Source of the DNA: Lytechinus pictus
Lineage: Eukaryota
DNA length: 64,000 nucleotides
NCBI RefSeq assembly: GCF_037042905.1
Contig: NW_026974241.1
Span: forward strand, 1 to 64,000
Direction of reading: 5' to 3'
A program made the position numbers and the translations under genes. Position 1 is the first letter of the stretch. Every line of letters begins with the position of its first letter. The notes under the pieces are model-generated. The model was not told the DNA's origin. It was given only the letters and a program-made list of their open reading frames with translations, and made no database searches. This document shows positions 14,601 through 34,300 of the stretch, one piece after another.

Positions 14601-16910
14601 CAATTTTAAGTTTAACAGCACTGCCAGTTCTTAAAAATGGCGTAAAAGATAACAAAATCCCAATCTAAACAAGTGGAATGCCTCTGGCCGTCTCACCTGC
14701 ATCACGCGATTCAATATAGCAGCAGTGCTGATTTTGAAAACTACTATAACTCGCACAAGATGTTCAGTGATACTTGGTTACTCTTATTTCCACGTTTTAT
14801 GAACTAGACCAATACACTTATAGAGATATGATGGCAATTCAACAAATACCCCCAACGTGGCCAAAGTTCTTTGACCTTACATGACCTTTGACCTTGATCA
14901 TGTGACCTGAAACTCGCACAGGATGTTCAGTGATACTTGATTACTATTATGTCCAAGTTTTATGAACTAGACCAACACACTTTCAAATTTATGGCTGTAA
15001 TTCAACAAATACCCCAATTTGGCCAAAGTTCATTGACCCTAAATGACCTTTGACCTTGATCATGTGACCTGAAACTTGCACAGGATGTTCAGTAATACTT
15101 GATTACTATAATGTCCAAGTTTCATGAATCAGATCCATAAACTTTCAAAGTTATGATGGTAATTCAACAGATACCCCCATTCGGCCAAAGTTCATTGACC
15201 CTAAATGACCTTTGACCTTGGTCATGTGACGTGAAACTCATGCAGGATGTTCAGTGATACTTGATTAACCTTATGTATAAGTTTCATGAACTAGGTCCAT
15301 ATATTTTCTAAGTTATGATGACATTTCAAAAACTTAACCTTAGGTTAAGATTTTGATGTTGATTCCCCCAACATGGTCTAAGTTCATTGACCCTAAATGA
15401 CCTTTGACCTTGGTCATGTGACATGAAACTCAGGCAGGATGTTCAGTAATACTTGATTAACCTTATGGCCAAGTTTCATGAACTAGGTCCATATACTTTC
15501 TAAGTTATGCTGTCATTTCAAAAACTTAACCTCAGGTTAAGATTTGGTGTTGACGCCGCCGTCGCCGTCGCCGCCGTCGCCGTCGGAAAAGCGGCGCCTA
15601 TAGTCTCACTCTGCTATGCAGGTGAGACAAAAATGTGAAATTTCAGTAACAAACTACAAACGTACAATAAATGCTGCACTTTATTCAAAATCCATGTCAT
15701 TTTCACCAAAATTTGCAGAGTTGTAAAGGAAGGTATACCTAAGAGGTACAAACATTAAAAAATAGGGGTTCATGTGTTGTTTTTAAACTATCAGCATTTT
15801 TATTAGAGCAAATGTGCTTTTTAAAACACCAAAAATGCGCCGAATAATTTGTATCTATGTGAAGAAAAAATCAAAACCACTCTACCATTTATTCAAACTC
15901 GGGGTAATATCCGTGATTCTTGGCAGCACTGCAGAGTAAAGTATTTTGAAATTGTAGATAATTTTTTTTAATCGTCCATGGAATAATTCCACTTTTTAGC
16001 TTCATGAAATAACACATCGGATCTGCAGTTAAAGTGCAGAAGATGAGAAAAATCAGCTCATACCCGCAGCTAATTAATCACCTGTTCATCCATTGTGACG
16101 TCAGCGCGCAGTGTAAACTATGCGCAGATCATAATGCGCACAAACATAACTGTGGAACGTCCTTAAATGCAATTTTAAAAAGAATCAAGTGCAAGTCCCA
16201 AGTAAGTGTTTTTGATGTGTTAAAAATCAAGTTGCAATTGATTTTTGAGTTGCGTTTGATTGCAACTGTTAATGCAGTGGGCCCCTTGTTAGATGACAAA
16301 TAATAATTGAACGTCCATCAGAACTCCATTTTTTTCAATAGGCTGGCTTACCATTCAAAAGGTTGGAAAGACCTGAAGGAGTTCAATGAAGGATCCATAG
16401 CAGCAAAGTCCCAGAAACGCACATCAAAGTCATAACCACCAGTCACAAGCCTAGAACCTGATGGATCCAGAGCTACAGCCGATACCTGAGCAGGGGGCGT
16501 AACACAAGTAGATAATATAATCAACATGCTTAATACAATGTTTGTACTTACTATGCATTATTACCCTGACTTTAGCACAGCTACCCTGATAGGAAGCTTG
16601 AGCATTCAAGGAATTCCTTTCTACAAAGTACCCATTTACTACACCTAGGTGGAGAGTAAGGCAAATGAGGATAAACATCTTGCCAAAGGATGTGAGTGCT
16701 GCAGTGGGATTTGAGAGATACGTATTTAGTCAAATTAAGTTTGCGCATTGCATTACTTATCATGTACGCGTCAAAGTGCGACTCGAAGTCATACTTAAAT
16801 CTTTGTGAAACACCCCCTGATTACTTAAAACTGAGAAAAATTATACTCACTGATTTATTGCCGTGATTCAGCACTATCTCATGGGTTGCAGGAATCTTTT
16901 TCTCTGGAGG
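2602..16910 (-). CDS. WDR70: WD repeat-containing protein 70 (13 exons; 5' exons not found in window)
   Basis: GT-AG exons with consistent phases: 16910-16851, 16485-16352, 12283-12130, 11518-11442, 10974-10797, 10284-10185, 9695-9611, 8310-8175, 7520-7420, 6383-6304, 4970-4842, 3237-3069, 2710-2602 (TGA); 503 aa. WDR70 motifs: KIPATHEIVLNHG, VSAVALDPSGSRLVTGGYDFDVRFWDFAAMD, DRDGFEVMECVKGDQYIVDMAKTKGHTAML, SVVRCMWHPKLNQI, RDAILRHAKDAEENPLWIAPAY. Confidence 0.93.
4162..4732. mobile_element. Kolobok-type MITE (TTAA TSD, AGG terminus) in WDR70 intron
   Basis: TTAA|aggtcaagtccaccc ... gggtgaacttgtact|TTAA. Confidence 0.75.
4897..5341. repeat. Tandem repeat, 4 x ~111 bp, spanning a WDR70 splice acceptor and exon start
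   Basis: Units beginning catctg(c/t)ttcttataagccataatctcctgagg start at 4897, 5008, 5118 and 5230. Confidence 0.9.
8423..9216. mobile_element. piggyBac-like MITE
   Basis: TTAA|ccctatcttaactggg ... cccagtttaataaggg|TTAA; CCC/GGG termini. Confidence 0.75.
12320..12825. mobile_element. Palindromic non-autonomous element (two nested hairpins)
   Basis: Inverted pair ttgtacaacgcc / ggcgttgtacaa, plus a long hairpin aaatagcgaata...gctctattcaac-tcggctcacgcctc-gttgaatagagc...tattcgctattt. Confidence 0.6.
13115..13322 (-). mobile_element. tRNA-derived SINE (degenerate)
   Basis: Minus strand shows a B-box-like gttcaaatcc and core ctccacccaggtgttaaatgggtacccggtagg, shared with the SINE at 37200. Confidence 0.65.
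14271..16162. mobile_element. Non-autonomous TTAA-specific TIR element (Kolobok-type GG terminus)
   Basis: TTAA|ggacgttccacagtta ... taactgtggaacgtcc|TTAA; perfect 16-bp TIR. Confidence 0.85.
14667..15633 (-). mobile_element. Helentron-associated (HINE/DINE-1-like) non-autonomous element with internal tandem repeats
   Basis: Subterminal IR gtctcacctgcat (14690-14702) / atgcaggtgagac (15616-15628); partial IR gtctcac at 15603; GCC/GTC microsatellite at 15555-15585; ~162-bp repeat units at 14759, 14922, 15084, 15246, 15438; A/T-run ends without a TSD. Confidence 0.75.
16540..16710 (-). mobile_element. tRNA-derived SINE fragment
   Basis: Minus-strand core ctctccacctaggtgtagtaaatgggtac resembles the other SINE copies in the window. 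Confidence 0.5.
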
Positions 16911-17170
16911 CTTTAAAAGAACAAGACATAAAATAAAAATATTATATTCTAAATGCAAACACTTCAATGCTTAAACTGATTGTGGTGTGGTTGGCAAACT
17001 CAAAAAAATTTATTATGATGTAGTATATGCAATTTTTCATGCTGAATACGAATCTGGCAATTGTTTCCCGTAATTTTGTCTCAATTCGACACAAATCAGG
17101 AAAAAGACCACGGTTAGGGAACGCCCACTAAAATTGTTCAAAAGTCTACCGATTACGTAATCGTTGTGTG

Positions 17171-17186
17171 ACGTCATCAAGGGAAT
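17171..17186 (+). promoter_or_regulatory. Subterminal inverted motif ACGTCATCAAGGGAAT upstream of KolX (overlaps CRE TGACGTCA at 17169-17176)
   Basis: Exact reverse complement at 31287-31302, upstream of the transposase ATG. Function is inferred. Confidence 0.55.
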
Positions 17187-17277
17187 ATCAAGCAGTGGGA
17201 TCGCTCGGCCAAGCGCGCGTATCCATTGAATTTTCACAACAAGTTCTCGCGAAACATTTTAAATTCAAGCACAAATC

Positions 17278-18956
17278 ATGAGTGATCTTTCAGGATCAGA
17301 GAGTGAATATGATCCTGCCCACTTGTCATCTGATCAAGATTCTCCATGGTCGAATTCAGAGAGTGAGCAAGAAGAAGAATTTGCCAGAGAAAATCAAGTA
17401 GAGGCCGGTCCTGATATTCCTGCTGGCATGCAAGCAGCGGGTATTTTGCCGTACCAATTCGAGCCCGAGTTCCAACCAGGGGAAGAAATTCAGAATGTTG
17501 GTGCCATCCAAGAAAATGACATTGAGGGTAGACTTGGAAACAACAATTGGTAAGATTATCTCATACATAATCGTATTATTAATACTCCGTAACTAGTACC
17601 CTGAGTGTCTGAAAAAGATGTCTCATCTGAGAAGGTCGGATTGGAAGTGACGGAGCACTAGCGTGCGCTGCAGCCGCTGCTACCCGACGCTTCCGGCTGG
17701 AAACACAGCTCAGTTACGTTGCTATTAAAAGCCGAAACGAGGCTGGTGAACGGATCTGAGCTGTGGCTGCTGCCCGATGCTTTGACCTGAGCTGAGGCGC
17801 TTCGAATTCGATGGAGTGAACTAGGAATCATTTTACTTGACCTAACACTTGGTATCTTGCAGTCTAATAAATGTTTTCATTTTGTTTTTCAAATTTCTGT
17901 TGTTCATGCAGGTGTTCATGCAGCGGAGGATGCCAAGCGATGCCTCGAGTTGTCGAGTCGTACTGCTGCAAAGAAGTGGCTCAGGTAGTGGCGATGATGG
18001 ACCAGTACACTGCTGCAGAACTGAACTGCATCACAGAGCACCCTGGCTTTGAAGGGGTTTGTTTAAATCCGTGGGTTTTAGACACTGCATACTTAGGGTA
18101 TCGTCAGCAATATGGTGACAGAGCACGGCATGATGCAACTGAAAATGAGTGAGTGTTTTTTCATGAACAATTGCACTTATTTTCTGCAATCTAATATTGG
18201 AATAAGAAAAAAATTATAAAAAAAAACATGATTTTTATCAACTCAAAATACTCAATTGTCCTGAATGGTATCATGTTTTATATCATTTAAAATTATGAAA
18301 ATATGTATCATAAGACATAAGGTAAGTGTTGTAATGAGCTACGGTGATATATATTTTTGAATGGTTATTTCCATTAGCAGTCTTCAATTTTATTCTTTTT
18401 TGACTCAGAGGTGTTAACTACAACCCCCTCCTTACTTATGAATCACCTAAAATATATGCACATGTAGTAGTCAGCATAGGCGGGGGGGGGGGAGGGAACG
18501 TGTCCCCACCCCCTAAATTTGAGGTGGGGGGACGATCCCCCCTAAATTTTTATTTGATCACCTTTTTTTTGCTTGTCAAAAGATTTTCTTGTCCCCCCCC
18601 CCTAAAATTTTGGTTGATAACTTTTTTTATTGGGGGGGGGGGGGTTGCTTGTCAAAAAATGTTGGTAATCCCCCTAGATTTTTTGACTTCCGCCGCTAAT
18701 GGTAGTCAGTAGGATTTAGGGGAAATTTTAATGATGTAGATTTAGAAATCATGTGATGTTCTGTATCTGATTTACTTATTTTTAATTTCTATTTATTTTT
18801 TGTAGGAAACACAGGCACGTTGGCTATCGGCAGCTCGCAAGATGGTGTTGGGGATTTCTAGGGAGATCTGTGCGCGTCCCCCTACCTTCCTGTGCGGTGA
18901 CTCACATCCGAGCTACTTATCCATCGGACATTTACAGAGGTTTTGAAGATGCGTAG
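17278..18956 (+). CDS. KolX-type transposon accessory protein with P2X7 C-terminal ballast-like Cys-rich domain (219 aa, 3 exons)
   Basis: Exons 17278-17549, 17912-18148, 18806-18956 (TAG); GT-AG, phases 2/2. Acidic N-terminus with PYQFEP, then WCSCSGGC..ESYCC..CITEHPGF..VCLNPWVL..NEKHRHVGYRQLARWCWG..LPSCAVTHIRATYP..YRGF. AATAAA at 19306. Confidence 0.88.
18475..18701. mobile_element. hAT-like MITE in KolX intron 2
   Basis: 8-bp TSD GTAGTCAG on both sides (18467-18474 and 18702-18709); ends cataggcgg / ccgctaatg. Confidence 0.7.
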
Positions 18957-20010
18957 ACCTTTTTTATGTTGATTTCAATGAAGGCGCCTCTGAATCAACA
19001 GAGACATACATGATTGATTCCATGACAAGGACTGGATGTACTTAAGTCTTAAACATTTTATCGAGTGCCATTATTTTGTGATCTCTCAACTAGAAGTACA
19101 TGTAATTTGAAAGAAATTTTTTGCCAAGTATACCTGGTGTGTAGAAGAAAATTTCTTTTTGTCACATTTTTGACTGATAAAAAGTCATAAAGATTCTGAT
19201 GTTTTTATCACTGTGCTAAAGACAAGCACTCAGAGTTGTTTTATTATTGTATGTTTTGATGAAATAACAGGGAAGTGCTGATTGTATTTATTTCTGTTTT
19301 CTTTAAATAAAGGTGTTCAAACCAACTTAATTTTCTTGCGTTCTTTTCCAAAGTCAGTTTAGGCAGTCTTACTACAGTCCACTTCTGTTATAATCTTAAT
19401 ATTTATGGCAGCACTCATGCAGTACATATGAAATTGGTACTGGAAAACTGCCTGTCATTATAAATTACTTTATCTGATTATCATTATAACAAGAGTGAAC
19501 TAATGAAACCAAACATTTTGGGTATGTTTGGCCTATAATCTAGGCAGCGGCTGGTGCTATTGTCTTTTGCTGCCAACTGTTAATGTAAACAAACAACGAT
19601 TTGCAGCCCACAGCTTATACTACAGTTAGCGTTGGTCAATTTTTTTAAATTATGGTCAACAAATAGGTGTGGAAGTTTCATACTAAAATTATGTGTTGTC
19701 TGTTGTTGATAAACAACGGCAACTATTAATGCAGGACCGGAGTGTATAGGCTGTGCTACTTTGTAGCCCACTGTTAACAGTTGAACGCAAAAGACAATGG
19801 CAGTAGCCCCGGGCAAGACTACAGGCTAGGAAATGTTGGATGATAGATGAATGATTGAATGTTGCAAAATTGCTTTGACTTAGATGAATATAAGGTAGAC
19901 TTAGGCAGAGTTATCTGTATTTAAATTCAGAGGTAAGAGCATTGTACAATGTAGATTTGATGGAAGTGGAGAACATGTGAAAGAGGGACAAAAGAGCGAT
20001 AGTGGAATCT

Positions 20011-20167
20011 GGGGCCCGTTTCATAAAGAACTGTGACTGTTGTAACTTTGCCATTATGGAAATTACCATGGTAACATTGCTCAGCAGCCAATCAAAATCA
20101 AGGTTACCATGGTAGTTGCCATAATGACAAAACTACCAACTGTTGTTACTCTTTATGAAACAGGCCC
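20011..20167. mobile_element. Harbinger-like palindromic MITE in the Kolobok intergenic spacer
   Basis: ggggcccgtttcataaaga ... tctttatgaaacaggccc. Confidence 0.6.
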
Positions 20168-21062
20168 AAGGGGCAAGAGTGCATGTAAAGAGGAATCCAA
20201 CCAAGATAAAAAGTTGTTAAAAGAGGGGAAAGAAAAATAATACAATAGGTGAAAGTGTATTATATCGGAGTAACAAGAAAGTTATGAATTTCTGAAAGTT
20301 GTAAAAATTTGTAATTTGTATACCATTAACTATCATGGAGGCTTCACCGTATTGATGCTGTCATCTTGATGGAGGGAATATTTTCCATTTGCCCAATATA
20401 CACAAATGTGTATTGCATAAAAAGTTATTTTTATTCACATTTTTACTTAAAATTATATATGGTATTTTTGCTCAGGAACATAAAAGATGCTGATATTTCA
20501 AGTACTACCGGGAGGGGGCCCTACTTATGGGTAATACACAATTCCCTGAGAACTGAGTATACAGCCCATTGGAAAGTTGTCCCTACCACTTGTTATAATT
20601 TACTTTCCAAATTGCCAACTTGCAATGTACAGTCTCGGTGATCTCATTTTTAAAACCTACATATAAAAATCCTTTATGGTTGTCAACAATATTCAGTCTA
20701 AAATTACAATAGTCCACTCCCATTATAATAAGACTTTCCAGGCCAAATCAATTACCTCTAAATAAATGCGGCATTGATTTTACACTTTATACTTGCATAA
20801 AAAATATGCCAATGCACAGTTTAGACATTTGGAGCATTGCAACAAGAGCGTCCTTCCAGTGCACATATAATGGTAGTGGACTGTATTACCATAAACTATG
20901 CAGTAGCTGTAGAAAGACAAGAGACAGAATGCTTTTTTTTTTGTTAAAAAATCCTGCAAACTATTATATTCTCAGAGAAGCATTGATTTGCAAGTAGAAA
21001 TGAGTGCAAGAGACATAAATATGAATAAATATAAGCTGGTCAATAGACATGTTATGGCTTAA

Positions 21063-21450
21063 CTCGTTCAGGACAATCGACCTTAAGTGGTTAAGGTAAA
21101 TCATTTTTGTTTCAGAGCTCTAAAAATTACACCAGGTACATTAGTAAAAGAGAGAAAAAAAAACTATGCATACATTGCACTCATTGTTGAGTGACCATAC
21201 TGCCAGGAATTTTATGAGGATAATCTTTAAACTCCTCAAATTGGCAACACATTGGAAGAATTGAAGACCAGAGTTTTTCATCGAAATTGGCGTTTAAAAA
21301 ATATTATCCAAGTTCCAAACCATGTATGTTGGTTTCAAAGACATCACATTCAATTGGAAGCATGTAGCATTAAAATAAATATTGCTGTTGCCCATTTGAG
21401 GAACGAAATGTGATCACTTTAGTTGTTAATTAATTCCTGTCCTGAATGGG
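21063..21450. mobile_element. piggyBac-like MITE in the Kolobok intergenic spacer
   Basis: TTAA|ctcgttcaggaca ... tgtcctgaatggg|TCAA (one TSD mismatch). Confidence 0.55.
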
Positions 21451-21479
21451 TCAAGATAAGTATAACCATGGAGGTAGTT

Positions 21480-21955
21480 TACAGAGTTGCTTGTACAAAT
21501 GCTTGAAAAAATTGGGGGGAAAAAAATGTTTTCCAATTTTAGTAGATGTTACATCAGGGAAGATTTTGGAAGCTACCTGAATCATCAAATTCAGCTGTTT
21601 AAAACATGGAACACTTTGAAATGCATTTCAAATGTATTTCTACCACTTCACCTACATTTATAAACACAATAACATTCATACAAAGAAATATCTATGTAAT
21701 ACATGCTATATAACTTCTTACAGAGTTGCTTGTAAAAATGCTTTAAAAAAATGTTTTCTGATTTTAGTAGCCGTTGCTTCAGGTCATGCAAGATTTTTTT
21801 TAAGCTACACGACACATATCCGAGTCATCAAATTCAGCTGGCTAAAACGTGAAATACTTTGACATGCATATCAAATGTACTTCAACTACTTCATCTACAT
21901 TTATAAATACAATCACATTTATGTAAAGAAATATCTACTTATTACATGCAAATAA
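21480..21955. repeat. Diverged tandem duplication, ~240-bp period
   Basis: acagagttgcttgta(c/a)aaatgctt at 21481 and 21720, followed by parallel downstream sequence. Confidence 0.65.
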
Positions 21956-22629
21956 CACAGTAGAGAAAACATTCTGATAATGCTCTTAAATCTTCAAAAT
22001 TTTATACAATTATTGCAGTTACTAGTATTCCGAAATTGTATAGACCATGAAAGTTTTCTTTTGGAAACCACTGTTGGAGCTACAGTGGTCGTAACCGGCC
22101 AGCATGAGAGATTTTGAACCACAACTCATCATGATAATCATTGACCAACGTTTCAAATGAATAGTATTTCTAACAAAACTCCTTGCAAAGAAGAATTGTA
22201 CATGTGTTACTGTTGAACAAATCTTTCCCAACAATATTTCCTTAAAATTATGTAACTGATCACTCACAAGTATGTGGTCGACTTTACTGTTGAACAAAAC
22301 TTAAACAAATATAATTCCATAATAGATATGATTCTTTTTGTTTAATAATTTTGAAGCAAAGGTATCAAATTGCTCAGTCATCTGTTTTGCCTTCACAATG
22401 TTATTTGTACAACTACATGTACATCAGAGATGTATGTCTTCATATAAAATTCGCTAAAAAATATAGTTCATCAGATGAAAATGGCATGTTTAATCATAAG
22501 GAATCTTTTCTTCAATAGAGTAACTAAATTTTCTCTTAAATGAACTTATGTGTTCAATCTTTCATTCGTTCCAATTTATCATGAAGCTGTATACGATATT
22601 AGCATGATAGGGTTTACAGTTCGCTTATT

Positions 22630-25600
22630 TTAATTAAAACGACTTCGGTGATCCTGAACAAGTTCCTCCTTGGGAGGAAAGGTATATTCACTGCATAAAG
22701 ATGGCGGGGCTTCCTTCCTCTCTGGCAGTTGAGATGATCCTGTGCACAATCGTCTGACCTCATCCATCAGATCATCAACAAATTCTGAGATACAAAAAGG
22801 TTAAAAAGTGAGGTTCAACATGTACAGGTCAGCTAGACCAGCTAATGGATATACAAATATGTTGGATGGTATTGATTTACCAGTGTTTTTCTTATGCCAT
22901 GTTAGTATGCTATAAAATGTACCACCAATGGGCATCAAGGAAAAAAAAAAGCTCTTTAATCTTTATAGATTATATTGTTGAGAACAGTTATAGTGATCAA
23001 CATAACACATGAGAAAAGTAGGATTTAACTGATGTTACTCTAGTAATGAATCATTGCCATGGAATCATCCTTTTTCATAATATGTTTCTGATATGATGAT
23101 GAACCTATAGTCGATAACACACAGAACAAAATAAACTCACTGAATGTTTTTGCTTCCTTAACAGCTTTCACTGATGCCTTCCCTGGCTTGTACTTTGGTT
23201 TGCTGACCATGTACCGCTTGTCCCCTTTCAACGTTTTTGCCTGCTGTCGGTTGCCATTTTCATTGAAGTCCATAGCAGCAAGTCTGAGCCTGAATGATAA
23301 CCAGAAAATAAATGCACATAGTAAAAGCATGTCTAATACAGTGCGTAAACACAATGCAACATGCAAATTGCTTTTATTTTTCACCCGGTTTAACTCAGAA
23401 GATTTTTCATTCTTGCACAAGAAAAACAGTTCAAAGAAAGGATACCAAAAAGTCACTTATCAGGGCTATCTGAATTTTAAACATAAAACTGTCTGCTCTT
23501 TCATTTGATACCCATACCACATGGAATGATCACGAAATACCAAAGTTAAGTTTATTCAAACTAATGCTTGAATTTTAATTTTATAAAATGAATGTGGCCT
23601 CTTACCACTAGCGTACCTACGGGGGGGACGAGCAACAACCCATACAAAATACATATCACTGCCCCCCCCCCCTGACGAGCTTGAAAGACCTTTTATGCCC
23701 CCCCCCCCCTGACGAACTTGAATACCTTTATTGCCCCCCCTGACGAGCTTGAAGACCTTTTTTTTTTTTTTTTGCTTTTTCAATTTTTTTTCAATAACCT
23801 TTATTTTTTATTGAAGACCTTTTTTTTCTTTCTTTTTTTCTGGTACAATAACCTTTTATTTTTCATTGAAGACCTTTTTTTTCTTTTTTTTTTCTGGTAC
23901 AATAACCTTTTATTTTTTATTGAAGACCTTTTTTTTTTTTTTTTTTTGGCGGCCGATTTTGCCCCCCCCCCCCCCCTGTGGAAAATCCTAGGTACGCCAC
24001 TGCCTCTTACTATCTGTCAGACTTTTTTTGGGGGGGGGGGTTATAAAACCATTTGCATTATTCCATATGGGTTTTAATCCAAACATTAGATCTACCCTTT
24101 TTAATAGAGTCCTATAAATATCCACTTTTGCTTGGAATTACCCACATTATTTTGTGTGTATGCTAAATAAAGAAACATGGTCCAATGTAACTCTTCTCAT
24201 AGAATATATAGTGCATTTACCTGCTAGTCATTCCTTCATACGAATAGGACTTCAGCTTGGGCGCATACCGGTTCACCAGACTGTGATATGACTCCAGGGA
24301 AGATGTCTGTTGGTCTCCAGACAACTTTTTCACATCGTTCAACAACATGGTGCTTTGCACGATACCTGTTAGTTTTTCACAGACTTTTGTGCCTGAAAAA
24401 TGGATACAAAAGGAGCGGAATCATTAAACAATTGTTGCCTTAGGTAACCAGTGTATCATGCTTAATGAGCAGGTAACGTCATAATTACAGTTTTCAAAAT
24501 GGAAAAAATGCAATAAAATTGAATCAACATACTTTATGAGAGTAATGGCATAAATTGATAATGAATGGTATTGGTAGGTAAGGAAAATACAATATTCATA
24601 AGGTTTGATTTTTCTTGTTTCATATGATACAGATCTAACATTAAACAAATGAATCTTATTCATGAATTTACCTGGTGTGAGCCATTTTTTCTTGCGACCT
24701 TGAGCTTGCAAGTCACCATGAAGACACTTGGGAAAGACTTCAGAATGACCTTCATGGATCCCTTGGATGTGGTTCATAAGAGACTTCCACTTGGCCACCC
24801 TCAGATCGTCTTCATCCTCTTCACAAGTTGCAGCCACCCAATACATGTGGTTGGTGATGCTTGGTTCCCATTGCACAAGTTCTTCACAATCCTTTTGCTT
24901 CGCCAAGGCATGCACCTTCTTTCCAACACCTAATATAGGTAATAAAAAATATACCAAAACTAAAAACAAAAACAACAAAAATGCCTTAATTGATGACATC
25001 ATGCGAAATGTTTATCATAGATAACTGCCTCACGTATTTATATGAAAAACCAAATGCAAGCATGATGCAAAAGAGAAACAAGGAGATGGAATGTGAAATA
25101 GAAGCATTAATTTTTGGACTAAATCACTACTCGCTTCACATGAAATGACATCACAGAATTCAGGCCTTTGACAAGTGAGATACTGCTGTTTTTTGAAGCT
25201 CGCTAATTTGAGTGCTTGTAAAGCAAAAAACTCACTTGGTAAGCAATTAAATTAGATAAAACTCACATTGTTTTCTGAGTACTTGCAGCATTCTAGCAGT
25301 GTATAGTTGCTTTTGCTTAGGACCAGGAGTTTAAGCACTAAATATTTAATCATAAACAAGTCGAATTAATATTTCATTTTAAATATATTTTGCAAGACAC
25401 AAATGTATGATAATTACTCACCTTTGGATACATGCCAGACATCATACACATGAATAATGTGTGGAAGTGTGATTCTGATGTATTTGGCAAGTTGTCTATG
25501 TCGGTCCGTTACCAACTTCCTGATTACTAGTCCCTTGTCATCAAGAAAGTTGACAACTCTCTTGAAACCTTCCAACTCCATGTGGTACGAACCCTTCACC

Positions 25601-28600
25601 TCATTACTCTATGAAAAAACAAAATACAAAATATAAATCAACATTGCATAACACACAATAGTGATAACATGAAATAACAGTTTGGGGCTGGAACATCAAA
25701 ATAGCCTTTAAATTTAATCAATTTAAATTGGCAGACATGAATATAATAAGTAACCAAGACAAGAGGAATTGTGTTTCAACTTAACCCGTCTTGGCAAAAA
25801 TGCAGATTCTTTATATTTACTTTCTATTTCATGAAATAAAACTAGGCACTTGTGGTCATATGTATCATGGGAACATGAACTAAGGACAGAAAATCAGACC
25901 CACCTGAACCAGCTGAAAATCAACAATCTTGTTGACATTCAATTCTAGGGCAGTGTATACCCCAAACTTTGCAGAATGTCCTGGACTGTCCGCTCTCCCA
26001 TCTCCCCCAATGGTGAGTGGCAGACCCCGTTCACACAGTTCAGTGAGCAGATGGTTCTGTTGCTTCTGCCATTGATTGGTGATAGCTGGATGCAAAACTT
26101 TCTGCTGGTGTCGGAAGAAAGTCCTGCGTGTGTGCGTTGCTACGTTAAAATGCTTCAGCACTCGCAGCGACTCACTGGGGCTCCCGCCAGCAAACAGGAT
26201 TGCCGCTGACAGCTGGAGGTTGCCAGCAGGATAGGGGCCTATCCATGGCTGGCTCTCCCATGTTGTCGACTTCTGGTCACAAGACAGGCACTCCCTTGTC
26301 ACAGAAAGGAGGCTTCCAACTTCCCTCTTTACAAGGGACACATTTGCAGACTTGCAGGATGGGCAAAACTGCAACAGCTCCAAAAGCTTAGACTCGTATA
26401 CAATGTATTTTTTTTCCTTGTGTGGAGGAATACCTTGGGCTGGGGCTTCCCATGTGGCCTTTTTGCTTGATCGCCTTTTCCTGTATTTGAAATAAAAGAC
26501 AAAAAATAAAATTGTTTAGAAATACAAAAAAAATCCTAAAAGACGATGTAAGAATTTCATCAGCCTGCTGTTGCTGTAATATATAAGAAAAATTATCTAA
26601 AATGCTTTATTTATTAAATCACTATGATATGTGTCTGAGGTTTTTCTCAAAAGAATTTACAGTACTAGTATTGATTTTGAACAGGATAATGAAAGAACTA
26701 ACCGTTTTCTCTGTCTTTTTTGTGGCTTGGCAATAACACGCTCATCTGATGATGAAGATGAAGATGATGGTGGTTTGTATCCAGGTGAGGAGGGTTCTGC
26801 GGCGTCACTTTCTGGAGATGATAACCTTTCTTCCTCCGCTTCCTTCGCATCAACTTTCTCTTCTGGTATATCCCCTTTGTCAAAAGAGGTCCCTCTTGAA
26901 ATAAAGGCTGGAATATCGGGTGGTATCTGTGAACCTGTGTTCTGCAGAAGTACAACCCTTTGGGACCCTGAAAATGTCCATGTATATTTTACTTTTACTT
27001 TGGTTGTGAAACAAATTTTCAGACATAGGGGAACACAACATATCTGCAATCCAGGGTGTAAGTTATCTGTGGCCCGGACTACTGCGTAGGACTTATTCTT
27101 CAAGTGGAATTGCAACATTTACACCTTCAAATTGGTACCCGTAACTTATCTTTCTAGCAACATTGTGAATAATATGTGACATACTGAGCATGACTCCTGT
27201 TAATGGTTTTGGTACTGCGCATATGCAAATCAGCAAAATCGCTTGCAAGTATCCAAAAATATACAAGGAACACAGAATGATGCAGTATTCTATTAAATGT
27301 AAATGTATAATAGCTATAGATGTTCATGACTATCATAGCCAAGTTAATTAAACTACATGACACTGATTCTGTCAGATTGGGAATGAATATCAGTAATTCA
27401 ATATTTATAGCCTCAATAAATATATTATCTAGAGCATATGTTTACAAAAACTTTCCACAACTTAGCAGCACCAGCCTCAAAAGGAAAATTGACAATATAG
27501 ATAAACAGATGAAAAATAAACTTACGTTTAACTCTTGTTGCTACAGAGACCTGTATCCCAACAGAGGTTGTATGGCCATGCTGCTGAAATTCCATAGCTG
27601 GATCTTTGAACGGCTGTTAATTGGATATCAATACAGTAGCCAAAATATGCTGAATACATGTACATACCACTACCAGTGACATGCAAAAAAATTATATACA
27701 TAAATAAAGTATGGTTTCCAGCACAAATACTAATCAAAACTACACCTGAATCAATTTTGGGATAAACTGTAATTTCAGTCACAGCCAGGTATGTTAAGAC
27801 TTGGAAGACAAGTATTATGAGTTTTTCATGAACCATATGTCTTGTTTGAATCACATGCATAAAGGTTTTGGTTTCTTTGGAAAGAAAAAAATGTCAATAT
27901 AATTTACATGTATCCTAAATTCTGCTAAATTCATTGTGGTTGATAATTTACTCAATATTATCCCTTATTTGCTGCTAAATTACCTTTTATGTTTGTTTGC
28001 TTTCATGTCTTTTCACGGGGAGGGGGTGCACAATTTGAAAACAAATTTATACCTGTTCATCAAAGGATTCTTCAGACTCAGATGAATGTTCATCTGTCCA
28101 TTGGCTGCATCCTGGCTCATCAGTGTCTGATGGACTTTCCATTGATGCAGGCTCCACTGCTGACCCTTGCTCCTCAGCATCCCTAGCTTCAACAGATGTT
28201 GACAGCAATTCATCCAGCATCTGTGAGAATAATTTAAATAAAAAATGAGAGAAAAATATACACAATAGCCATGTGTTCTTATTTCTAAAATAATAAACTT
28301 AAGGAATTAATAACATATTAACATGCTAATTTCAGCCTTAAGTTTGGGCTGTGTAACATGTATTTTTTTTAATATGAAATAAACCATGATTGAATTGAAT
28401 GGAATTAGAAATCATCTTCCTTCAGATCTATTTTTCATTCAGACCTCAGTTAGATTTCACTACCTACTTTATGATGTATGGCAGTGAGTACAAACTGTTG
28501 CAAAGTCACCCTACATAATTTCATATATGCATTGTATGGAGTAATCATTGGTGGGATAAGAAAGTCCAAATATTACATTTTAAATTTTCAGTACGAGAAA

Positions 28601-31139
28601 TTAGATGTATGCATATTTATGCAAATTGGAGCACCTAATTTGCTTAATTGGTAAAATGAGCATTAAGTATTTATTACAATTATTAAAAATCATAGAAAAT
28701 AAAAAAAGTGAGAAATTAAACATTGGTGGGACATGGAACCTCTAACGCTCTAACATTTTATTATTGAGGGCTATCTATATTAATATGCAAATTAAGTAAT
28801 GTCAAAAGACAAAATGATCTATATGTAATACTTTGGGGACATTTTAAAACTTATTTCCCGGAGTACAATACTTGCATTATTGCATCTTTAGGCAGACTTT
28901 CTGACTTATCAAGTATAAAAATGTAATACCACGAAAATAATCAAAAATACAAATTCGTTTTTTTTTCAAATAAAATTGTCAATTCATTCATTCCACTGTA
29001 TCTTCAACCATGACAATTGAGATGTTTCATTGTATTTATATCTCATTCAACCAAATAACTTAATTTAATTATATTTTGCACATTGTATCTCTACATTAAT
29101 CCCTGTATTGTAATTATTAAATCAATTCAGTTATGTTGTATTTGCTATCACAAAGATAATTTTCATGCCTTATTGTATATCCAAATCAATTCTTATAGAG
29201 CCCAATAGTTCATCCCATTTTCATTATTTCTGTACACTCTTTAAAAAAATTTTATTTCTATCAAAAAAAATTTCTTCTAAAAAATATAGATCTACATGTA
29301 TAGCTCCATGGTATAAACTATTTCTACAATCATTATTGTGAATCTTTTAACTCTGTATATTATTGCATGAACAATTTTGTCCAAACTTATAATATCATGT
29401 TGTTTAGAAGGTTCCTTTCATGCAGATTTGTTTACCCTTCTCATGACTTTGTAAAACAAACACTGAATTGAATTCATTTCTTTTCCATTAAAATATACAA
29501 AATCAAGACAAAGAAACATTACAAAACATAAAAATGAGACAATATACAATATGATATTAGGCCTGGAATCTGGATCTGGAATAAAAAAAAAAACTTTTTG
29601 GCTTTTTAAAAAAAAGGTAAAAATAATCTAACGTTTTAATTCCCAGGGTAGCCACTTCAGTTAGGAAACTGTTCTACCACCGGGCCCTGCATAACATAAT
29701 AATTAATACCTGAATGTAATTGTAATTATTATCCTTCTCCAATCTAAATGCTGAGTGCCTAGTATTTTAGTAAGGCAGGAGGTCCCTTTTTTAATGACTC
29801 GGTCGGGTATCGAACCCAAGACCTCCCGTTCATGAGGCAGGCGCTTTACCACTAGAGCCACCATACCCCCAAAAGAGTTTGTATATTTCCTTACTTGAGA
29901 AATGAACCACAATGGCACAAACAACTGAAACAAGAAAACTTTTAGACCTAACGTTGGGCCTACTGTACCTCTTCACAGCACTAGCCACGTACTACAATGT
30001 AGATCCTGTCTTGAAATACAACTCACAATTAATAGGATTTCTAATTCGCAACAGAAATTTAGAATTCGTAGACCTGTTTCCAATGTCATGAATGTGGAGC
30101 CTGGACTCTTGAGGAAAGTTTGAGGATCACTTCAATTTCCTTTTTTATTTTCGAGGCGTATCCTATGGCAAGTTCCCCCAAGTCTACGCACACGCGTATC
30201 AGCGCAATTCTAGTAAAAGAAGATACGCAACGAGCACGAGCTCTACACATGCAATACCTAGCCATAGCCTAGGTCTACAGGCTGACAGGTATTTAAAAAA
30301 AAATCTGACTCAAAATGATGGATTTAGGGCATTTCATGTGACGGCATCAAAATGCAGCCTTTCTCATCAAAATCCCCGAATCGTGTGCAAAGATTGAGTG
30401 CGCAGACATGGGCTCGGGGTAGGCCTACCATTTTTTGACAAATCTGAAAATTACAGTAGGCCTACGAGGTTTTTCCAAGAAAATCCTATAGGCCTATTTT
30501 CTTTCATTTTTTTAATGAGAAATTTAGTACAATTACTAAAATACTAATAATAATATAAGGAACATTATTAACGGAAAGATTTTGTTAATAAATAATAAGA
30601 AGAAATTCATGTTAATCTAAACTCAAATTGTTTGATGCGCAGACTTGGGGCCCACCATCATAAACACCTTCAAAATAAAAAATAAATAAAATAAGGAAAT
30701 TGACGTGATCCTCACACTTTCCGTCGTTGAACTTGAACTGACTGACCACAACAATTGCAAAGATAAACTTTAAACAAAGTCTATTACTAATAGATAATAT
30801 GCTCACCCTCATTTTCTTTCGTTTGTCCGCTGCTGTCCGTGACCCACTCCTCTTTACTTGCATTGATGACCCACTCTTTATTTTAGGCACAGCGTCGGGC
30901 TTCAGCCGCCGGGTCCTCTTCATGCCAAAAGCAGCATGCAACCCGTCATCAAAATCCGCATCTTCGAAGTGGCTACTGCACACCACGCTCCAGTCACTGG
31001 GGCCGCTCCAATTTGCTCGGGTCAACTTCACTTTCGAGACCCATATTCTGCGTAAATTTGCATCTTTGGGAAACAAATGCAAGCTGGCACCATCCTTCGT
31101 AGTGTTGCTGCAACCTCCGACGATGCATCTCGCCGGCAT
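22630..31139 (-). CDS. Kolobok-type transposase: THAP + C4 zinc finger + DDE nuclease (783 aa, 10 exons)
   Basis: Exons 31139-30807, 28220-28053, 27613-27526, 26967-26703, 26480-25904, 25608-25422, 24929-24672, 24392-24221, 23289-23141, 22784-22630 (TAA); all GT-AG, 2352 nt open. THAP: CIVGGC..FP..W..CSSHF..AVP. C4 finger: CPSC..CLSC. Catalytic motifs: GDGRADSPGHSAKFG, LVTDRH, DVWH, TSSLESYHS. Also NHxxxxH..CLH. The low-complexity exons 2-4 are the least certain. Confidence 0.88.
23606..24002. mobile_element. hAT-like MITE in transposase intron 8
   Basis: 8-bp TSD CCTCTTAC (23598-23605 and 24003-24010); TIR cactagcgtaccta / taggtacgccactg; internal gaagacc-poly(T) repeats. Confidence 0.8.
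29643..29866 (-). mobile_element. tRNA-derived SINE in transposase intron 1
   Basis: Minus-strand A box tggctctagtgg and B box ggttcgataccc, followed by a non-tRNA body. Confidence 0.7.
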
Positions 31140-31286
31140 CTTGATATTATCGCAAATATCACAAATGTACAAAACTTTTCCAAAAAGAACTCGGTAAACT
31201 TTCTCAACAATACAGCGCTACAATACGTAAACATAATAGACGAAAACTTTTTACGTGCGCGATGATCGAGTTTGCAGAGCTGCCAG

Positions 31287-31357
31287 ATTCCCTTGATGAC
31301 GTATAGTCACGTGACTAGCGAGCTCGAGAGTTTTCGATCTTTTTCTGGAGGCGGGGC
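31287..31357 (-). promoter_or_regulatory. Putative transposase promoter
   Basis: 16-bp mirror motif (31287-31302), perfect palindrome TAGTCACGTGACTA (E-box/CLEAR-like, 31304-31317) and GC box GAGGCGGGGC (31348-31357), ~150-220 bp upstream of ATG 31139. Confidence 0.5.
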
Positions 31358-34300
31358 TTATGAGCGTGAGAAACTATGAAATTAACTTCTAAAACCAGCA
31401 ATATCTTATTAATCCTAGATAAATAAATCATATTAATAATGTTAAAATTCTTAGAAAAACAATTGAAAACTAATAAGAGCAAAATATAGTTGCATGACTC
31501 AGAACCTTTAAGCCTCCCACCTCTCCAACTACTCAAGCTTCTCAACTCTTTCTGATTTCCAGTCCTTTTGAGAAATACACTCATTTCCGAAAATTACTCT
31601 ACTTTCTAACCTCCACTTTCTCGCCTATCCATTTTAATTCTACCTCTATTCTGCATTTTTACTTTTCTTTTTTTGTGTGTGTGTGTTTAAAAAAAAATTG
31701 TCCTCCACATCACATGGACATTGCCTCTTGGTTGATTTGAAGAAAATCTTCCGGGGTGGGTGGGAAGGGTTAATTTAGCCGCATATGACACGTACTCTCT
31801 ACTACACAATTGGCAGAAGTTTACATTTTATGTGTAAGTTGGGGAGTTGCCAATTTAGTCATACTATTTTCACTGATTAAAGGTAATTAAAAGTACCTGT
31901 CAGAGACCTTTAACGCCTACATATTTGTCCTTGATTTCTTTAACCTTTACGTTTGTTTCGTGACCATCAAACCTCAACGACTTTATTTGATTTGTGGTTT
32001 TTTTTCTATATCAACTACTCAAGGAAAAGATTTGCTCAGTGAAGCAGAGATATAAAATTGATAATATCCCATAGGTATAAGAGGGAGTCAAATACTTAAA
32101 ACAATAATATCATTGTCGCTATAAGCATAGGACGGGAAATAAAATATAAGAGCGTTTTCATAAGTTTTCTGTGTATACAATTTACATGTTATATATAATC
32201 AAGTTTTAAACAGAGATGCAGAATGAAATGTAATTGGACAGATTACACAATCAAGGTAATGGAATTACAATAAATGTCGATCCATAAACATGAGTAAAAA
32301 AAATCCTTACTAATTTATAAGCTACCTCAATGTCATTCAAAACTTTAATTAGAGGACTGGTGACGTTTCAGCTGAGTCTATATATTAATAAATAGCTGAG
32401 TCTATATATTGATAAATAGGTTTTTAAGAAAAAGCAAGGAGATACGACCTCTAAACCCCCTTGGAATAAGGCAGTAGCGCAATTAGCCCATAATAAATTT
32501 AGGCGGCAAGACATGGTGTATGGGGCCCAATTAAAAAAAGTTGCGATTGAGTGAAGCGAGCGAGCAAAAATGTTGACCTGTTTCAATACAAAAATCTAAT
32601 TTTGTTATATATTTTGACTTATTCAGAGAAATAATATCATTTTTCCTTTCATTCCCCTTTCTTTCTCTTTCCCTTTTTTTCTTGGTCGTCATGTTTTTTA
32701 GGGCGGATTCATGGCCCGAGCCCCCCTTCCCATCTTTACGCAAGTGGATTAAGCACCCCTTATTTCAATTTTCTAATAATTGTTAAAGATCATGTTATCA
32801 TAAAACGGCAAAGAAGATCATCCAGAAGCATGAGAAGTATAAGCAATAAAATTGTTCACTATGAGGGACATTCTGTATTCCATTCAAAGAAAAATGACAA
32901 TACATAATGTTATGATATTGATAATATATTATCACTGAATAACATTTCATGTATCATTTGAATGTCGTTAACTATTAAAGAGTTTATGTAATGGAAATGA
33001 CCATGAAAACCTACAAGTTAGAGTGCTTCTAATTTTCTGGTCAATTTTTCAAAAGATTTCAGTTCGCGCTTTGGGTTCTTATTAATATTTACATGTACAT
33101 AGTACCTAGTCTTGTTGTAGAAATGAGCTTAAAAAAAAAAGATCAGCTGGAAGGATTGACCCCCCCCCCGCTGGCCTTCATATGTGGGGCTTGGGACCCC
33201 CCAAAAAAAAATGAATGAAGGAGAATTTTTGCTCGCTCATTCGCAACTTTTTATAAATTTTGCCCTTTATAAAATTATTATGCTAACCCTTAAAAATTTT
33301 TGCTTAAAAATAAGCAGCAATTACTTTAGAATGGATACAATTTTCATCACACTGGATAAATAAAAATGCCCAAAAGAAATGCCCAATGTTGTTTGGACAC
33401 AAAATTACCCTCATGGAGCCACTGACCCCCCCCCCCCTCTAAATAAAAAAAAATCCCTCAGAGAAAATTTGTATCAGTCATCCCCCCCCCCGCTACCATG
33501 AACACCGATCGACACCCATACTTCAGTCGCCAACCGACCACGTACAAAATAACAAGCCCTTTGAATACATACCCTTATTCAAATATAATTTCAGAAAGAC
33601 TGATGCCTGATACAAAAGAACATCTTGCATGCTGAACCACCTGCTGAACCGGATCCAATTTACGAAAGAAAAGAAAATCGTTACCTTGTAAAATGATTTA
33701 CCACTATCAGGGAATGCTTGTTTGCTGTATGAATTTCATCACGTACACTTACTTCATGGGCTGGTGCGTTTTATATGCTATCCTACCACCAATCTACGTA
33801 CGGGTGAACTTTCTCACGATAAAACACCATTATTTTCCAAACTTCCAAATAAAGCATCTATTTGTTTATCAATTTTTTTCAAATCGTATGTGGTTGATAA
33901 ACTTCTTGCGAATCAAGTAAATGTCAATAAATGTGGTCAGCGTTTACGCACTTGCCATTCTTAATTATAAATAGATTGATTTGTTTTGACAGGTGTTTAT
34001 TGCTATCTGAAACAGCCCCCCCCAAAAAAAAAAAAAAATGTCAATCAATTTCGTCGAAAGTTGGTGGACTGGGATAGCAGATCATCTGAAGATTTGCACC
34101 GGACAAACAATTGCAAATAATTATGTCGTTGCACATGTGCAAGAGATTCCAATGCAGTCCCGGTCTACCAACTTTCGATAAAAGCCTCCCAGCTCTCCAT
34201 TGTGATTTAACTTGCATTTTCAAAGGAATTGGTGCGTTGTAGAGAGTTCCCCCGTAGTAAATGCGAAAACTCTCTATTTTCTCCTTTAAGAATTAAAATT

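What the first reader, a model, noticed from the sequence alone, without database searches (positions are those of the whole stretch)
16975..31507. Intron-rich, fully open two-gene Kolobok transposon: THAP-DDE transposase facing a P2X7-ballast-like partner
Seen: scattered ORF fragments splice through 11 canonical GT-AG introns into two uninterrupted convergent genes (783 aa and 219 aa). The THAP, C4 finger and catalytic motifs (GDG, TDRH, DxWH, LESY) are all present, and the right end is AGG.../TTAA. Established: Kolobok elements target TTAA and encode a THAP-containing DDE transposase plus a second protein, KolX. Inference: this is a ~14.5 kb autonomous-type member of that family. Gene pipelines would probably mislabel it as an uncharacterised THAP protein plus a 'P2X purinoceptor 7-like' gene.
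Basis: partly seen in the sequence, partly recalled or inferred. Interest (0 to 1): 0.82.

Follow-up and report, generated by a model that had tools for sequence, protein, structure and literature searches.

The report
Recently active two-gene Kolobok transposon
This is one of four identical copies of a 14.5-kb Kolobok "cut-and-paste" transposon in the sea urchin Lytechinus pictus; it carries a transposase gene and the known P2X7-tail-like KolX gene, and it is a well-preserved, recently mobile member of a kind described in 2022.

Summary
Eleven GT-AG introns join the fragments into a 783-aa THAP/zinc-finger/DDE transposase (minus strand, 10 exons) and a 219-aa KolX protein (plus strand, 3 exons). 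My transposase model is 100% identical to a RefSeq L. pictus protein (LOC129279419). The assembly's gene call for the partner has the same range and length and carries Pfam P2RX7_C.

The interpretation also holds. This is a Kolobok element of the Kol0 lineage (transposase + KolX, TTAA target, AGG termini), a kind published by Kojima & Bao in 2022.

New details:
- The assembly holds three more copies that are 100.000% identical over 14,513 nt. Each sits at a different TTAA site with both termini.
- L. variegatus has a 12.3-kb copy in a different gene (ASCC3 intron). Between the two, dN/dS is 0.10 for the transposase and 0.09 for KolX.
- The family is therefore mobile and was active very recently.
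- The window copy lacks the last 20 bp on its KolX side. Its true left edge is 16999, not 16975, and the TTAA at 16971 is chance. It is probably stuck but still codes and is transcribed.
- The window also holds a probable excision footprint at 61437/61438.

This scan has already found this kind on other DNA of the same genome. Verdict: new member of a known kind, moderate-to-low interest.

The parts
16999..31507 (-). Kolobok (Kol0) element DNA retained in this copy: 14,509 of the canonical 14,529 bp
   Evidence: 100.000% identical, with 0 gaps, to three sibling copies L005, L006 and L007 over window 16999-31511. Colinear with the L. variegatus copy L003 at 85-93%.
31492..31507 (-). Transposase-side terminus (reads AGGTTCTGAGTCATGC inward), intact
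   Evidence: Identical in all four L. pictus copies and in L. variegatus. Similarity to every other locus stops exactly here.
31508..31511 (.). TTAA target-site copy flanking the transposase-side end
   Evidence: TTAA abuts this terminus in all five copies, and the DNA beyond it differs at each locus.
16975..16998 (.). 24 nt that are not element DNA. They stand where siblings carry the 20-bp KolX-side terminus (GTGACAATGTCAGAAAACCT) followed by TTAA
   Evidence: No match to the canonical L. variegatus KolX-side terminus anywhere in the window. Self-comparison finds no TIR partner.
30807..31139 (-). Transposase exon 1 (aa 1-111): THAP zinc finger with C-x4-C-x42-C-x2-H and the AVP box
   Evidence: PF05485 E=2.5e-16. 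Foldseek matches THAP2 and THAP1. An RNA contig joins 30807 to 28220 and extends 5' to 31226.
28053..28220 (-). Transposase exon 2 (acidic linker)
   Evidence: Exact RNA contig joint. Same exon in L. variegatus.
27526..27613 (-). Transposase exon 3 (88 nt, linker), the least obvious exon
   Evidence: Needed to keep the frame. Present in both RefSeq isoforms. Conserved with AG/GT in L. variegatus.
26703..26967 (-). Transposase exon 4 (Ser/acid-rich linker, basic patch). RefSeq isoform X2 uses an acceptor 60 nt further in
25904..26480 (-). Transposase exon 5: C4 zinc finger and first catalytic D (GGDGRADSPG)
   Evidence: Covered over 25904-26479 with no mismatch by a 3,244-nt RNA contig, i.e. 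to the donor edge and to within 1 nt of the acceptor edge. 3,351 homologues found. Invariant columns.
25422..25608 (-). Transposase exon 6: second D (TDRH) and DVWH signature
24672..24929 (-). Transposase exon 7: zinc finger between DxxH and E
24221..24392 (-). Transposase exon 8: catalytic E (LESYH)
23141..23289 (-). Transposase exon 9 (HFNEN-type C-terminal region)
22630..22784 (-). Transposase exon 10 with stop codon
17278..17549 (+). KolX exon 1 (acidic N-terminus, ends in the W of the W-C-x-C motif)
   Evidence: The assembly's gene call has the same range.
17912..18148 (+). KolX exon 2 (Cys cluster, CC, CITEHPGF)
   Evidence: Agrees with published KolX Figure S6.
18806..18956 (+). KolX exon 3 (YRQ...W...LG...LPSC...IR...Y.GF) and stop
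   Evidence: PF20478 P2RX7_C at 28.1 bits against a cut-off of 23.5, E=2.3e-6, profile positions 146-191 of 192. Weak match in the right place to P2X7 chain 9e3m_A residues 546-592.
17150..17186 (+). KolX-side promoter-like block: 14-nt palindrome (17150-17163) plus the 16-mer ACGTCATCAAGGGAAT (17171-17186)
   Evidence: A perfect inverted copy of the 16-mer lies at 31287-31302. Both copies are conserved in L. variegatus. CpG observed/expected is 1.53 here against 0.5 for the whole element.
31287..31317 (-). Transposase-side promoter-like block: the 16-mer (31287-31302) plus a 14-nt E-box palindrome (31304-31317)
   Evidence: CpG observed/expected 1.61. The 5'UTR reaches at least 31226.
18953..20469 (.). 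1.5-kb block absent from the L. variegatus copy. It starts at the KolX stop and makes the protein tail 6 aa shorter than in L. variegatus
30095..30722 (.). High-copy MITE-like repeat nested in intron 1 (39-nt inverted arms at 30113-30151 and 30684-30722)
29642..29864 (.). High-copy short repeat nested in intron 1, itself split by a 92-nt insert
   Evidence: depth, joints, loose ends.

Best explanation
The stretch is a copy of an autonomous Kolobok DNA transposon of the Kol0 lineage in Lytechinus pictus.

The canonical element is 14,529 bp long. It starts and ends with imperfect AGG-type inverted termini and inserts into TTAA, which it duplicates. It carries two convergent genes, each read inward from a CpG-rich promoter about 200-400 bp inside an end:
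- a 783-aa transposase with an N-terminal THAP DNA-binding finger, a disordered acidic/serine linker, a C4 finger and an RNase-H-like DDE core with the DxxH signature and an inserted zinc finger;
- the 219-aa KolX protein, which belongs to the same family as the zinc-binding cytoplasmic 'ballast' of the P2X7 receptor.

Shown here: the gene structures, their transcription, the family assignments, the TTAA duplications, four copies identical over 14.5 kb at four different sites, a copy at a non-orthologous site in L. variegatus, and strong purifying selection on both genes.

Inferred: the THAP finger and core bind the ends, cut the element out and paste it into a new TTAA. KolX is needed for propagation, because it is conserved as tightly as the transposase, but its biochemical role is unknown. 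The shared 16-mer and palindromes near both ends act as promoter and/or transposase-binding sites.

This particular copy has lost the last 20 bp on its KolX side. It can probably no longer be excised as a unit, but it can still supply both proteins in trans.
For: Gene models:
- Built.
- The transposase model is identical to RefSeq P0382.
- The partner gene is called at 17278-18956 as 219 aa with PF20478.

RNA:
- A contig joins exon 1 to exon 2 exactly, and another covers exon 5 to its donor edge and to within 1 nt of its acceptor edge.
- RNA runs of the same species hold 0.17-0.26 of the words of a stretch that is 24% exon, and 0.32-0.51 of the KolX stretch.

Family:
- THAP at E=2.5e-16.
- 3,351 homologues.
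- Invariant D445, D512, D533-W-H and E659 plus the finger residues.
- AlphaFold model with pLDDT above 90 in the THAP domain and the core.
- Best solved-structure matches are the IS256-family ISCth4 transposase (E=1.8e-5), THAP2, Hermes and the P element transposase.
- Motif-by-motif agreement with Kolobok-2_DR and Kolobok-1_XT in Kojima & Bao Data S5, and with KolX in their Figure S6.
- PF20478 on KolX exon 3.

Mobility:
- Three sibling copies are 100.000% identical over 14,513 nt. Each is flanked by TTAA and by different host DNA.
- The L. variegatus copy lies in an ASCC3 intron with TTAA on both sides.
- The window holds an unoccupied counterpart of the L005 site.

Selection (L. pictus copy against L. 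variegatus copy):
- Transposase dN/dS is 0.105 with dS 0.116. KolX dN/dS is 0.09.
- There are no indels in 2,352 coding nt against 69 gap events in about 5.2 kb of intron.

Truncated end.
Against: - No transposition assay exists for this or, to my knowledge, any Kolobok. Activity is inferred from identical copies.
- Some of the four copies lie on unplaced scaffolds (the window itself is a 72-kb unplaced scaffold). Part of the copy count, or the truncated junction at 16998/16999, could be an assembly product.
- Raw RNA reads of one 2026 sample barely cover the exons, so expression is low or stage-specific.
- The two KolX introns were not checked with reads.
- KolX's role is unknown.
- The termini are only 10 of 16 alike, as in other Kolobok families.
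Confidence: 0.9

Rival explanations
1. The window copy is a complete element bounded as the reader wrote (16975-31507), with TTAA duplications on both sides and a very degenerate left inverted repeat.
For: TTAA lies at 16971-16974 and at 31508-31511. The shared 16-mer sits about 200 nt from each proposed end (196 and 205 nt).
Against: Three siblings are identical up to 16999 and then carry 20 nt of canonical terminus plus TTAA. The window instead has 24 unrelated nt. TTAA occurs about once per 100 nt in this region.
Confidence: 0.04
2. The pair is a domesticated host locus (two Kolobok-derived genes kept by the sea urchin for its own use), not a mobile element.
For: Both reading frames are intact and under strong purifying selection. 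Both are transcribed. Both promoters are CpG islands. Domesticated Kolobok transposases and KolX derivatives (Nanor, P2X7 tail) are known (PMC6004289, PMC9587614).
Against: There are four identical copies at four different TTAA sites in one assembly. The L. variegatus copy lies in another gene, and at least four L. variegatus loci fall in the same 90% cluster. The termini are conserved.
Confidence: 0.03
3. The missing 20-bp end, and perhaps some of the four 'copies', are assembly artefacts: a chimeric contig or a haplotig duplication on unplaced scaffolds. The real locus would hold a complete element.
For: The window is an unplaced 72-kb scaffold, and part of it (51815-64000) duplicates a chromosomal region at 99.99%. 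100% identity over 14.5 kb is also what collapsed or copied repeat consensus would give.
Against: The four copies have four different pairs of flanks. A breakpoint 20 bp inside a repeat end is an odd place for an overlap-based misjoin. The assembly's WD40 gene model starts inside the element and splices to the exon at 16910, though I could not see whether RNA supports that model.
Confidence: 0.12

Closest known systems
Kol0 lineage of Kolobok DNA transposons (Kolobok-1_XT type; Kapitonov & Jurka 2007; Kojima & Bao 2022, PMC9587614)
   Same: Two genes (DDE transposase plus KolX), TTAA target duplication, RR...YY termini, a C/DxxH signature and a zinc finger between the second D and E, and a KolX protein related to the P2X7 ballast.
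   Different: The paper lists Kol0 from vertebrates, annelids, cnidarians and sponges, and its figure adds lancelet and acorn worm. Echinoderms appear there only for KolobokP. This element is longer (14.5 kb), largely because of its 11 introns and nested repeats.
Kolobok-2_DR (zebrafish) transposase row in Data S5 of PMC9587614
   Same: Closest by eye among the published rows I read: HSAKFG.YT, IVD.QL.QSNE..GSYHME.EG, VTDRH, YDVWH, FPKC.H, KKW..PG, QTSSLE.FHS.
Xenopus XKol full-length elements and T2-MITEs (PMC6004289)
   Same: TTAA flanks, AG(G) termini, imperfect 16-nt terminal repeats and sizes of 7-14 kb. The urchin KolX-side terminus contains TTCTGACAT, which also lies in the XKol-A1 left terminus.
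   Different: Different host phylum. In the frog many transposase genes are domesticated. Here the copies are identical and flanked by duplications.
P2X7 receptor cytoplasmic ballast / zebrafish Nanor (Pfam PF20478)
   Same: KolX keeps the W-C-x-C...C, CC, C-I-T and P-S-C cysteine pattern and the C-terminal YR...W...LG...IR...Y.GF block.
   Different: KolX is a stand-alone 219-aa protein with an acidic N-terminus and no channel part. There is one extra residue in the first Cys cluster. Zinc or GDP binding was not tested here.
IS256-family transposase ISCth4 (PDB 6XG8) and the MuDR/P/hAT group
   Same: Best solved-structure match to the core (E=1.8e-5, TM 0.46-0.50 by target), so it has the same RNase-H-like DDE architecture. 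There are weak Pfam Mutator/MULE hits.
   Different: 13-15% sequence identity. ISCth4 has no THAP domain, no partner gene and a different target duplication. This is a relative in fold, not the same family.

Membership tests
Kolobok superfamily | DDD/E transposase with an RNase-H-like core and three catalytic acidic residues | tested here: met
   D445, D512 and E659 are invariant or nearly invariant across 44 homologues. The model is confident in the core. Foldseek matches DDE transposases and integrases.
Kolobok superfamily | [quoted passage not shown] | tested here: met
   DVWH at 533-536, with D533 invariant and W535/H536 at 90% or more. Same place as in the published Kolobok rows.
Kolobok superfamily | [quoted passage not shown] | tested here: met
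   H593, H598, C608 and H610 are conserved. They align with the H...H...C.H block of Kolobok-1_XT and Kolobok-2_DR.
Kolobok superfamily | TTAA target-site duplication | tested here: met
   TTAA lies on both sides of L005, L006, L007 and the L. variegatus copy, with different host flanks at each. In the window copy only the transposase-side TTAA is genuine.
Kolobok superfamily | Termini 5'-RR ... YY-3' (AGG type), short imperfect inverted repeats | tested here: met
   Canonical ends begin AGGTTC... and AGGTTT..., and 10 of 16 positions agree. The window copy keeps only the first; the second is deleted.
Kol0 lineage | A second gene, KolX, of the P2X7 ballast family | tested here: met
   PF20478 scores above the gathering cut-off on exon 3. 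It is also recorded for the 219-aa gene product in all four loci. An unannotated KolX lies tail-to-tail with the transposase in L. variegatus and in a pipefish.
Kol0 lineage | Placement with Kolobok-1_XT and relatives in a transposase phylogeny | not testable with these tools
   Repbase sequences cannot be loaded. Only motif strings from the paper's supplement could be compared.
Domesticated Kolobok-derived host gene | A single copy at a syntenic site, without termini or target duplication | tested here: not met
   Four identical copies at different sites. A different gene context in L. variegatus.
piggyBac (the other TTAA-targeting superfamily) | piggyBac-type DDD transposase and CCC...GGG termini | tested here: not met
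   No piggyBac Pfam hit on any exon. The termini are AGG...CCT. The fold matches are IS256, hAT and P types.

The most novel reading that the evidence does not exclude
The window may record a recent chain of Kolobok events on one haplotype.
- First, an imprecise excision left a 13-bp deletion with 3-nt microhomology at 61437/61438.
- Second, an abortive or one-ended cleavage at the KolX-side end of the copy at 16999 removed 20 bp of the terminus together with flanking host DNA that held the 5' exons of WDR70.
- As a result, the element's CpG-island promoter, read backwards, now supplies the first exon (ATG at 17177) of a 5'-truncated WDR70.

If true, this would be direct evidence that a Kolobok is active now. 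It would also show what its excision footprints and adjacent deletions look like, which is not documented for this superfamily.
Probability: 0.25. Interest if true: 0.5.

Novelty: new member of a known kind. Interest (0 to 1): 0.3.

Why it matters
The architecture (THAP-DDE transposase plus a P2X7-ballast-like KolX gene, TTAA target) was published in 2022, so the kind is not new. This scan has also met several such elements in the same genome.

Three things are useful here.
- The family looks alive. There are four copies without a single difference over 14.5 kb, both genes are transcribed, both are under strong purifying selection, and there is an unoccupied or footprint allele. I found no Kolobok for which transposition has been reconstituted, so this is a concrete candidate for doing so.
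- KolX is conserved as tightly as the transposase (dN/dS about 0.1). This argues that the ballast-like protein is needed for propagation, and the element gives a tractable system to ask what that fold does.
- For genome annotation, the RefSeq 'uncharacterized' gene LOC129279419 and the 219-aa partner gene called next to it are transposon genes.

Tried and rejected
- Self-comparison of the two ends for inverted repeats found only the internal 16-mer. The reason became clear later: the left terminus is deleted.
- I considered a near-palindromic flank (GGAGGC-TTTAA on the left, TTAA-GCCTCC on the right) as a longer TIR or a palindromic target. I dropped it because the left half is the start of a WDR70 exon and sibling copies have other flanks.
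- KolX exon 2 alone, and a 5-sequence profile, gave no significant PDB or Pfam hit. Exon 3 did.
- The L. pictus protein LOC135153414 (88% to KolX exon 2) led to locus L001. That locus is not a copy but a tandem array built from KolX exon-2 fragments.
- A search for N-terminal WDR70 exons to the right of the element, by open frames and motifs, found none. I had no WDR70 reference protein, so this is weak.
- I considered a THAP-WDR70 fusion transcript because exon 5 ends in phase 0, like the WDR70 acceptor. I judged it unlikely. In the 3,244-nt RNA contig, the length left after exons 6-10 (1,688 nt) ends exactly at a genomic A10 run at 20942, which fits a plain 3'UTR. This was not tested directly.
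- The first protein-library job was lost and was re-run.
- The spliced proteins could not be handed to Pfam, PDB or structure tools, because they have no reference. I used exon pieces and the identical RefSeq proteins instead.

Full report
WHAT IS THERE

I translated both strands of 16-32.5 kb and read the splice sites.

On the minus strand, ten exons join through nine GT-AG introns into an open frame of 2,352 nt (783 aa). The exons are 31139-30807, 28220-28053, 27613-27526, 26967-26703, 26480-25904, 25608-25422, 24929-24672, 24392-24221, 23289-23141 and 22784-22630.

On the plus strand, three exons (17278-17549, 17912-18148, 18806-18956) give 219 aa through two GT-AG introns.

The least obvious exon is the 88-nt exon 3. 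I found it only because the frame demands an exon of length 1 mod 3.

INDEPENDENT SUPPORT FOR THE GENE MODELS

- A profile search that included the window's exon pieces (alignment A2) found a 783-aa L. variegatus RefSeq protein that is 97.2% identical without gaps (P0265).
- The 90% cluster of that protein contains an L. pictus RefSeq protein, LOC129279419/LOC129279622 isoform X1, that is 100% identical to my model (P0382).
- Isoform X2 differs only by an acceptor 60 nt inside exon 4, and it keeps the 88-nt exon.
- On the window's own scaffold the partner gene is called at exactly 17278-18956, as 219 aa with Pfam P2RX7_C.
- All 13 exons map onto the L. variegatus copy with the same lengths and AG/GT flanks. 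The one exception is an in-frame 9-nt indel in KolX exon 1.
- RNA-derived contigs of the same species join 28220 to 30807 without a mismatch and extend the 5'UTR to 31226. A 3,244-nt contig covers exon 5 over 25904-26479, i.e. to its donor edge and to within 1 nt of its acceptor edge.
- RNA runs of that species hold about the exonic share of the words of both genes.
- Raw reads of one 2026 sample hardly touch the exons, so expression is not high everywhere.
- The two KolX introns were not checked with reads.

WHAT THE PROTEINS ARE

Transposase:
- Exon 1 is a THAP finger (PF05485, E=2.5e-16).
- The core exon finds 3,351 proteins in the 1.8-billion-protein library. Homologues break at the same exon borders.
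- In a 44-protein alignment the following are invariant or nearly so and present here: the C4 finger (C324, C327, C349, C352), D445 (GGDGRADSPG), D512 (TDRH), D533-x-W535-H536, a second finger (H593, H598, C608, H610) and E659 (LESYH).
- None of the 22 residues that differ between the two Lytechinus proteins falls on these columns.
- An AlphaFold model of the L. variegatus protein is confident in the THAP domain and in residues 300-750. The linker 125-299 is disordered.
- Its best solved-structure matches are the IS256-family ISCth4 transposase (E=1.8e-5), the THAP2 and THAP1 fingers, Hermes, the P element transposase and retroviral integrase cores.
- The published Kolobok alignment (Kojima & Bao 2022, PMC9587614, Data S5) shows the same motif string block by block. 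It is closest to Kolobok-2_DR and Kolobok-1_XT.

KolX:
- Exon 3 alone passes the Pfam cut-off for P2RX7_C (28.1 bits). It aligns, weakly but in the right place, to residues 546-592 of P2X7.
- The whole protein follows the KolX rows of the paper's Figure S6.
- The same paper states that Kol0 elements carry a transposase plus KolX, duplicate TTAA and end in RR...YY, and that KolX has the ballast fold.

WHERE THE ELEMENT ENDS, AND WHETHER IT MOVES

Comparing the window's two ends with each other gave no terminal repeat. Other copies settled the question.

The L. variegatus gene lies in an intron of an ASCC3 helicase gene. Its locus is colinear with window 31519-17009 at 85-93%. That copy is 12,338 bp long, with TTAA on both sides and AGG-type termini.

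In the L. pictus assembly the identical 783-aa protein is encoded at four places:
- One is the window itself, which is the first 64 kb of the unplaced scaffold JAZDCF010000121.1.
- The other three (L005 and L006, 109 kb apart on CM073236.1, and L007 on another scaffold) are 100.000% identical to window 16999-31511 over 14,513 nt with no gap.
- Each of the three is flanked by TTAA and by its own host DNA.

The canonical element is 14,529 bp, and its termini agree at 10 of 16 positions. The KolX-side terminus contains TTCTGACAT, which also occurs in a Xenopus XKol terminus.

Four copies without one difference over 14.5 kb, at four sites, mean transposition in the very recent past.

The 90% protein cluster also holds four L. 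variegatus loci on different chromosomes.

Between the L. pictus and L. variegatus copies:
- dS is 0.116 and dN/dS is 0.105 for the transposase and 0.09 for KolX.
- The coding sequence has no indel, against 69 gap events in about 5.2 kb of intron.

Both genes are therefore kept by selection while the element moves. This is the pattern of a living transposon lineage, not of a domesticated locus.

WHAT IS SPECIAL ABOUT THE WINDOW COPY

Identity with the siblings stops at 16999. The siblings continue with 20 nt of terminus and TTAA. The window continues with 24 unrelated nt and then, by chance, a TTAA at 16971. No match to the L. variegatus form of the KolX-side terminus occurs elsewhere in the window.

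Sixty-odd nt further left lies the acceptor of a WDR70 exon (16910-16851). The rest of WDR70 runs down to about 2605 on the minus strand.

I found no upstream WDR70 exons to the right of the element. The assembly's 510-aa WD40 gene model starts at an ATG at 17177 inside the element's KolX-side promoter and splices from TAC|GTAATC to 16910.

A deletion that removed the element's tip together with host DNA is a reasonable reading. A misassembly on this unplaced scaffold is not excluded.

A SECOND TRACE OF ACTIVITY

The flanks of L005 equal window 51815-61442 and 61433-64000 at 99.96-99.99%. The window therefore carries the unoccupied counterpart of that insertion.

Compared with the filled site collapsed to one TTAA, the window lacks 13 nt that include the TTAA, and the break is bounded by a 3-nt repeat. 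This looks like an excision footprint repaired by microhomology, not a never-used site. I mark that as inference.

REGULATORY-LOOKING FEATURES

A perfect 16-mer (ACGTCATCAAGGGAAT) lies in inverted orientation about 200 nt inside each canonical end. Each copy sits next to a 14-nt palindrome with an ACGT core. Both 16-mers are unchanged in L. variegatus.

The two regions upstream of the start codons have CpG observed/expected of 1.5-1.6, against 0.5 for the whole element and 0.35 for exon 5. They are probably promoters and may also hold transposase-binding sites. Neither role was tested.

OTHER TAXA

The pipefish homologue P0029 sits in a 6.4-kb element. It has TTAA flanks, AG termini matching at 17 of 25 positions, and an unannotated KolX gene tail-to-tail with the transposase. 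This is the same architecture in a distant animal.

VERDICT

- Observation: confirmed.
- Interpretation: supported, with the left boundary and the completeness of this copy corrected.
- It is a new, very well-preserved and apparently active member of a known kind.
- The scan had already reported the same kind, and apparently the sibling L005, on other DNA of this genome.

Noticed in passing
window 61425-61445: This is the unoccupied counterpart of the chromosomal insertion site of sibling copy L005. It lacks 13 nt (ACATTAAAGCTAC, including the TTAA) and the break is bounded by a TAC microhomology. It is a probable Kolobok excision footprint.
   Followed up: partly
window 2605-17177, minus strand: A WDR70-like WD40 gene. 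Its recognisable exons run from 16910-16851 down to the stop near 2605. No N-terminal exons were found upstream. The assembly's 510-aa model takes its first 7 codons (ATG at 17177) from inside the transposon's KolX-side promoter palindrome.
   Followed up: partly
window 17150-17186 and 31287-31317: A perfect 16-nt inverted pair, each next to an ACGT-core palindrome (TTACGTAA type on one side, CACGTG type on the other). Both sit in CpG islands (observed/expected 1.5-1.6) inside an otherwise CpG-depleted element. The 16-mers are unchanged in L. variegatus.
   Followed up: partly
L001:9469-11797 (L. pictus CM073228.1): A tandem array of about 74-nt and about 170-nt units derived from KolX exon 2 (85-94% to window 17987-18151), followed by a decayed KolX exon 3. 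A small satellite has formed from a transposon gene, and one unit is annotated as the 57-aa protein LOC135153414.
   Followed up: partly
window 18953-20469: A 1.5-kb block absent from the L. variegatus copy begins at the KolX stop codon. It shortens the protein tail from ...FEEAQEHKRC to ...FEDA. The block contains several short inverted-repeat (MITE-like) units.
   Followed up: partly
window 31512-31694: A very high-copy short repeat (depth tens of thousands in L. variegatus DNA contigs) starts right after the TTAA at the transposase-side end. The element therefore landed in, or next to, a common repeat.
   Followed up: no
window 34945-35271, minus strand: An open fragment of a non-LTR retrotransposon reverse transcriptase (…FDTVPH…GVPQGTVLGPLLF…).
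   Followed up: no
window 39177-61018, plus strand: Exons of a sodium:dicarboxylate symporter (SLC1-type, Pfam SDF) gene. The sibling copy L005 sits just beyond the end of the called stretch of the chromosomal version of this gene.
   Followed up: no
L002:9712-16104 (Corythoichthys intestinalis): A compact 6.4-kb Kol0 element inside a dynein heavy-chain gene. Its KolX gene (15387-14858, minus strand) is not annotated.
   Followed up: partly
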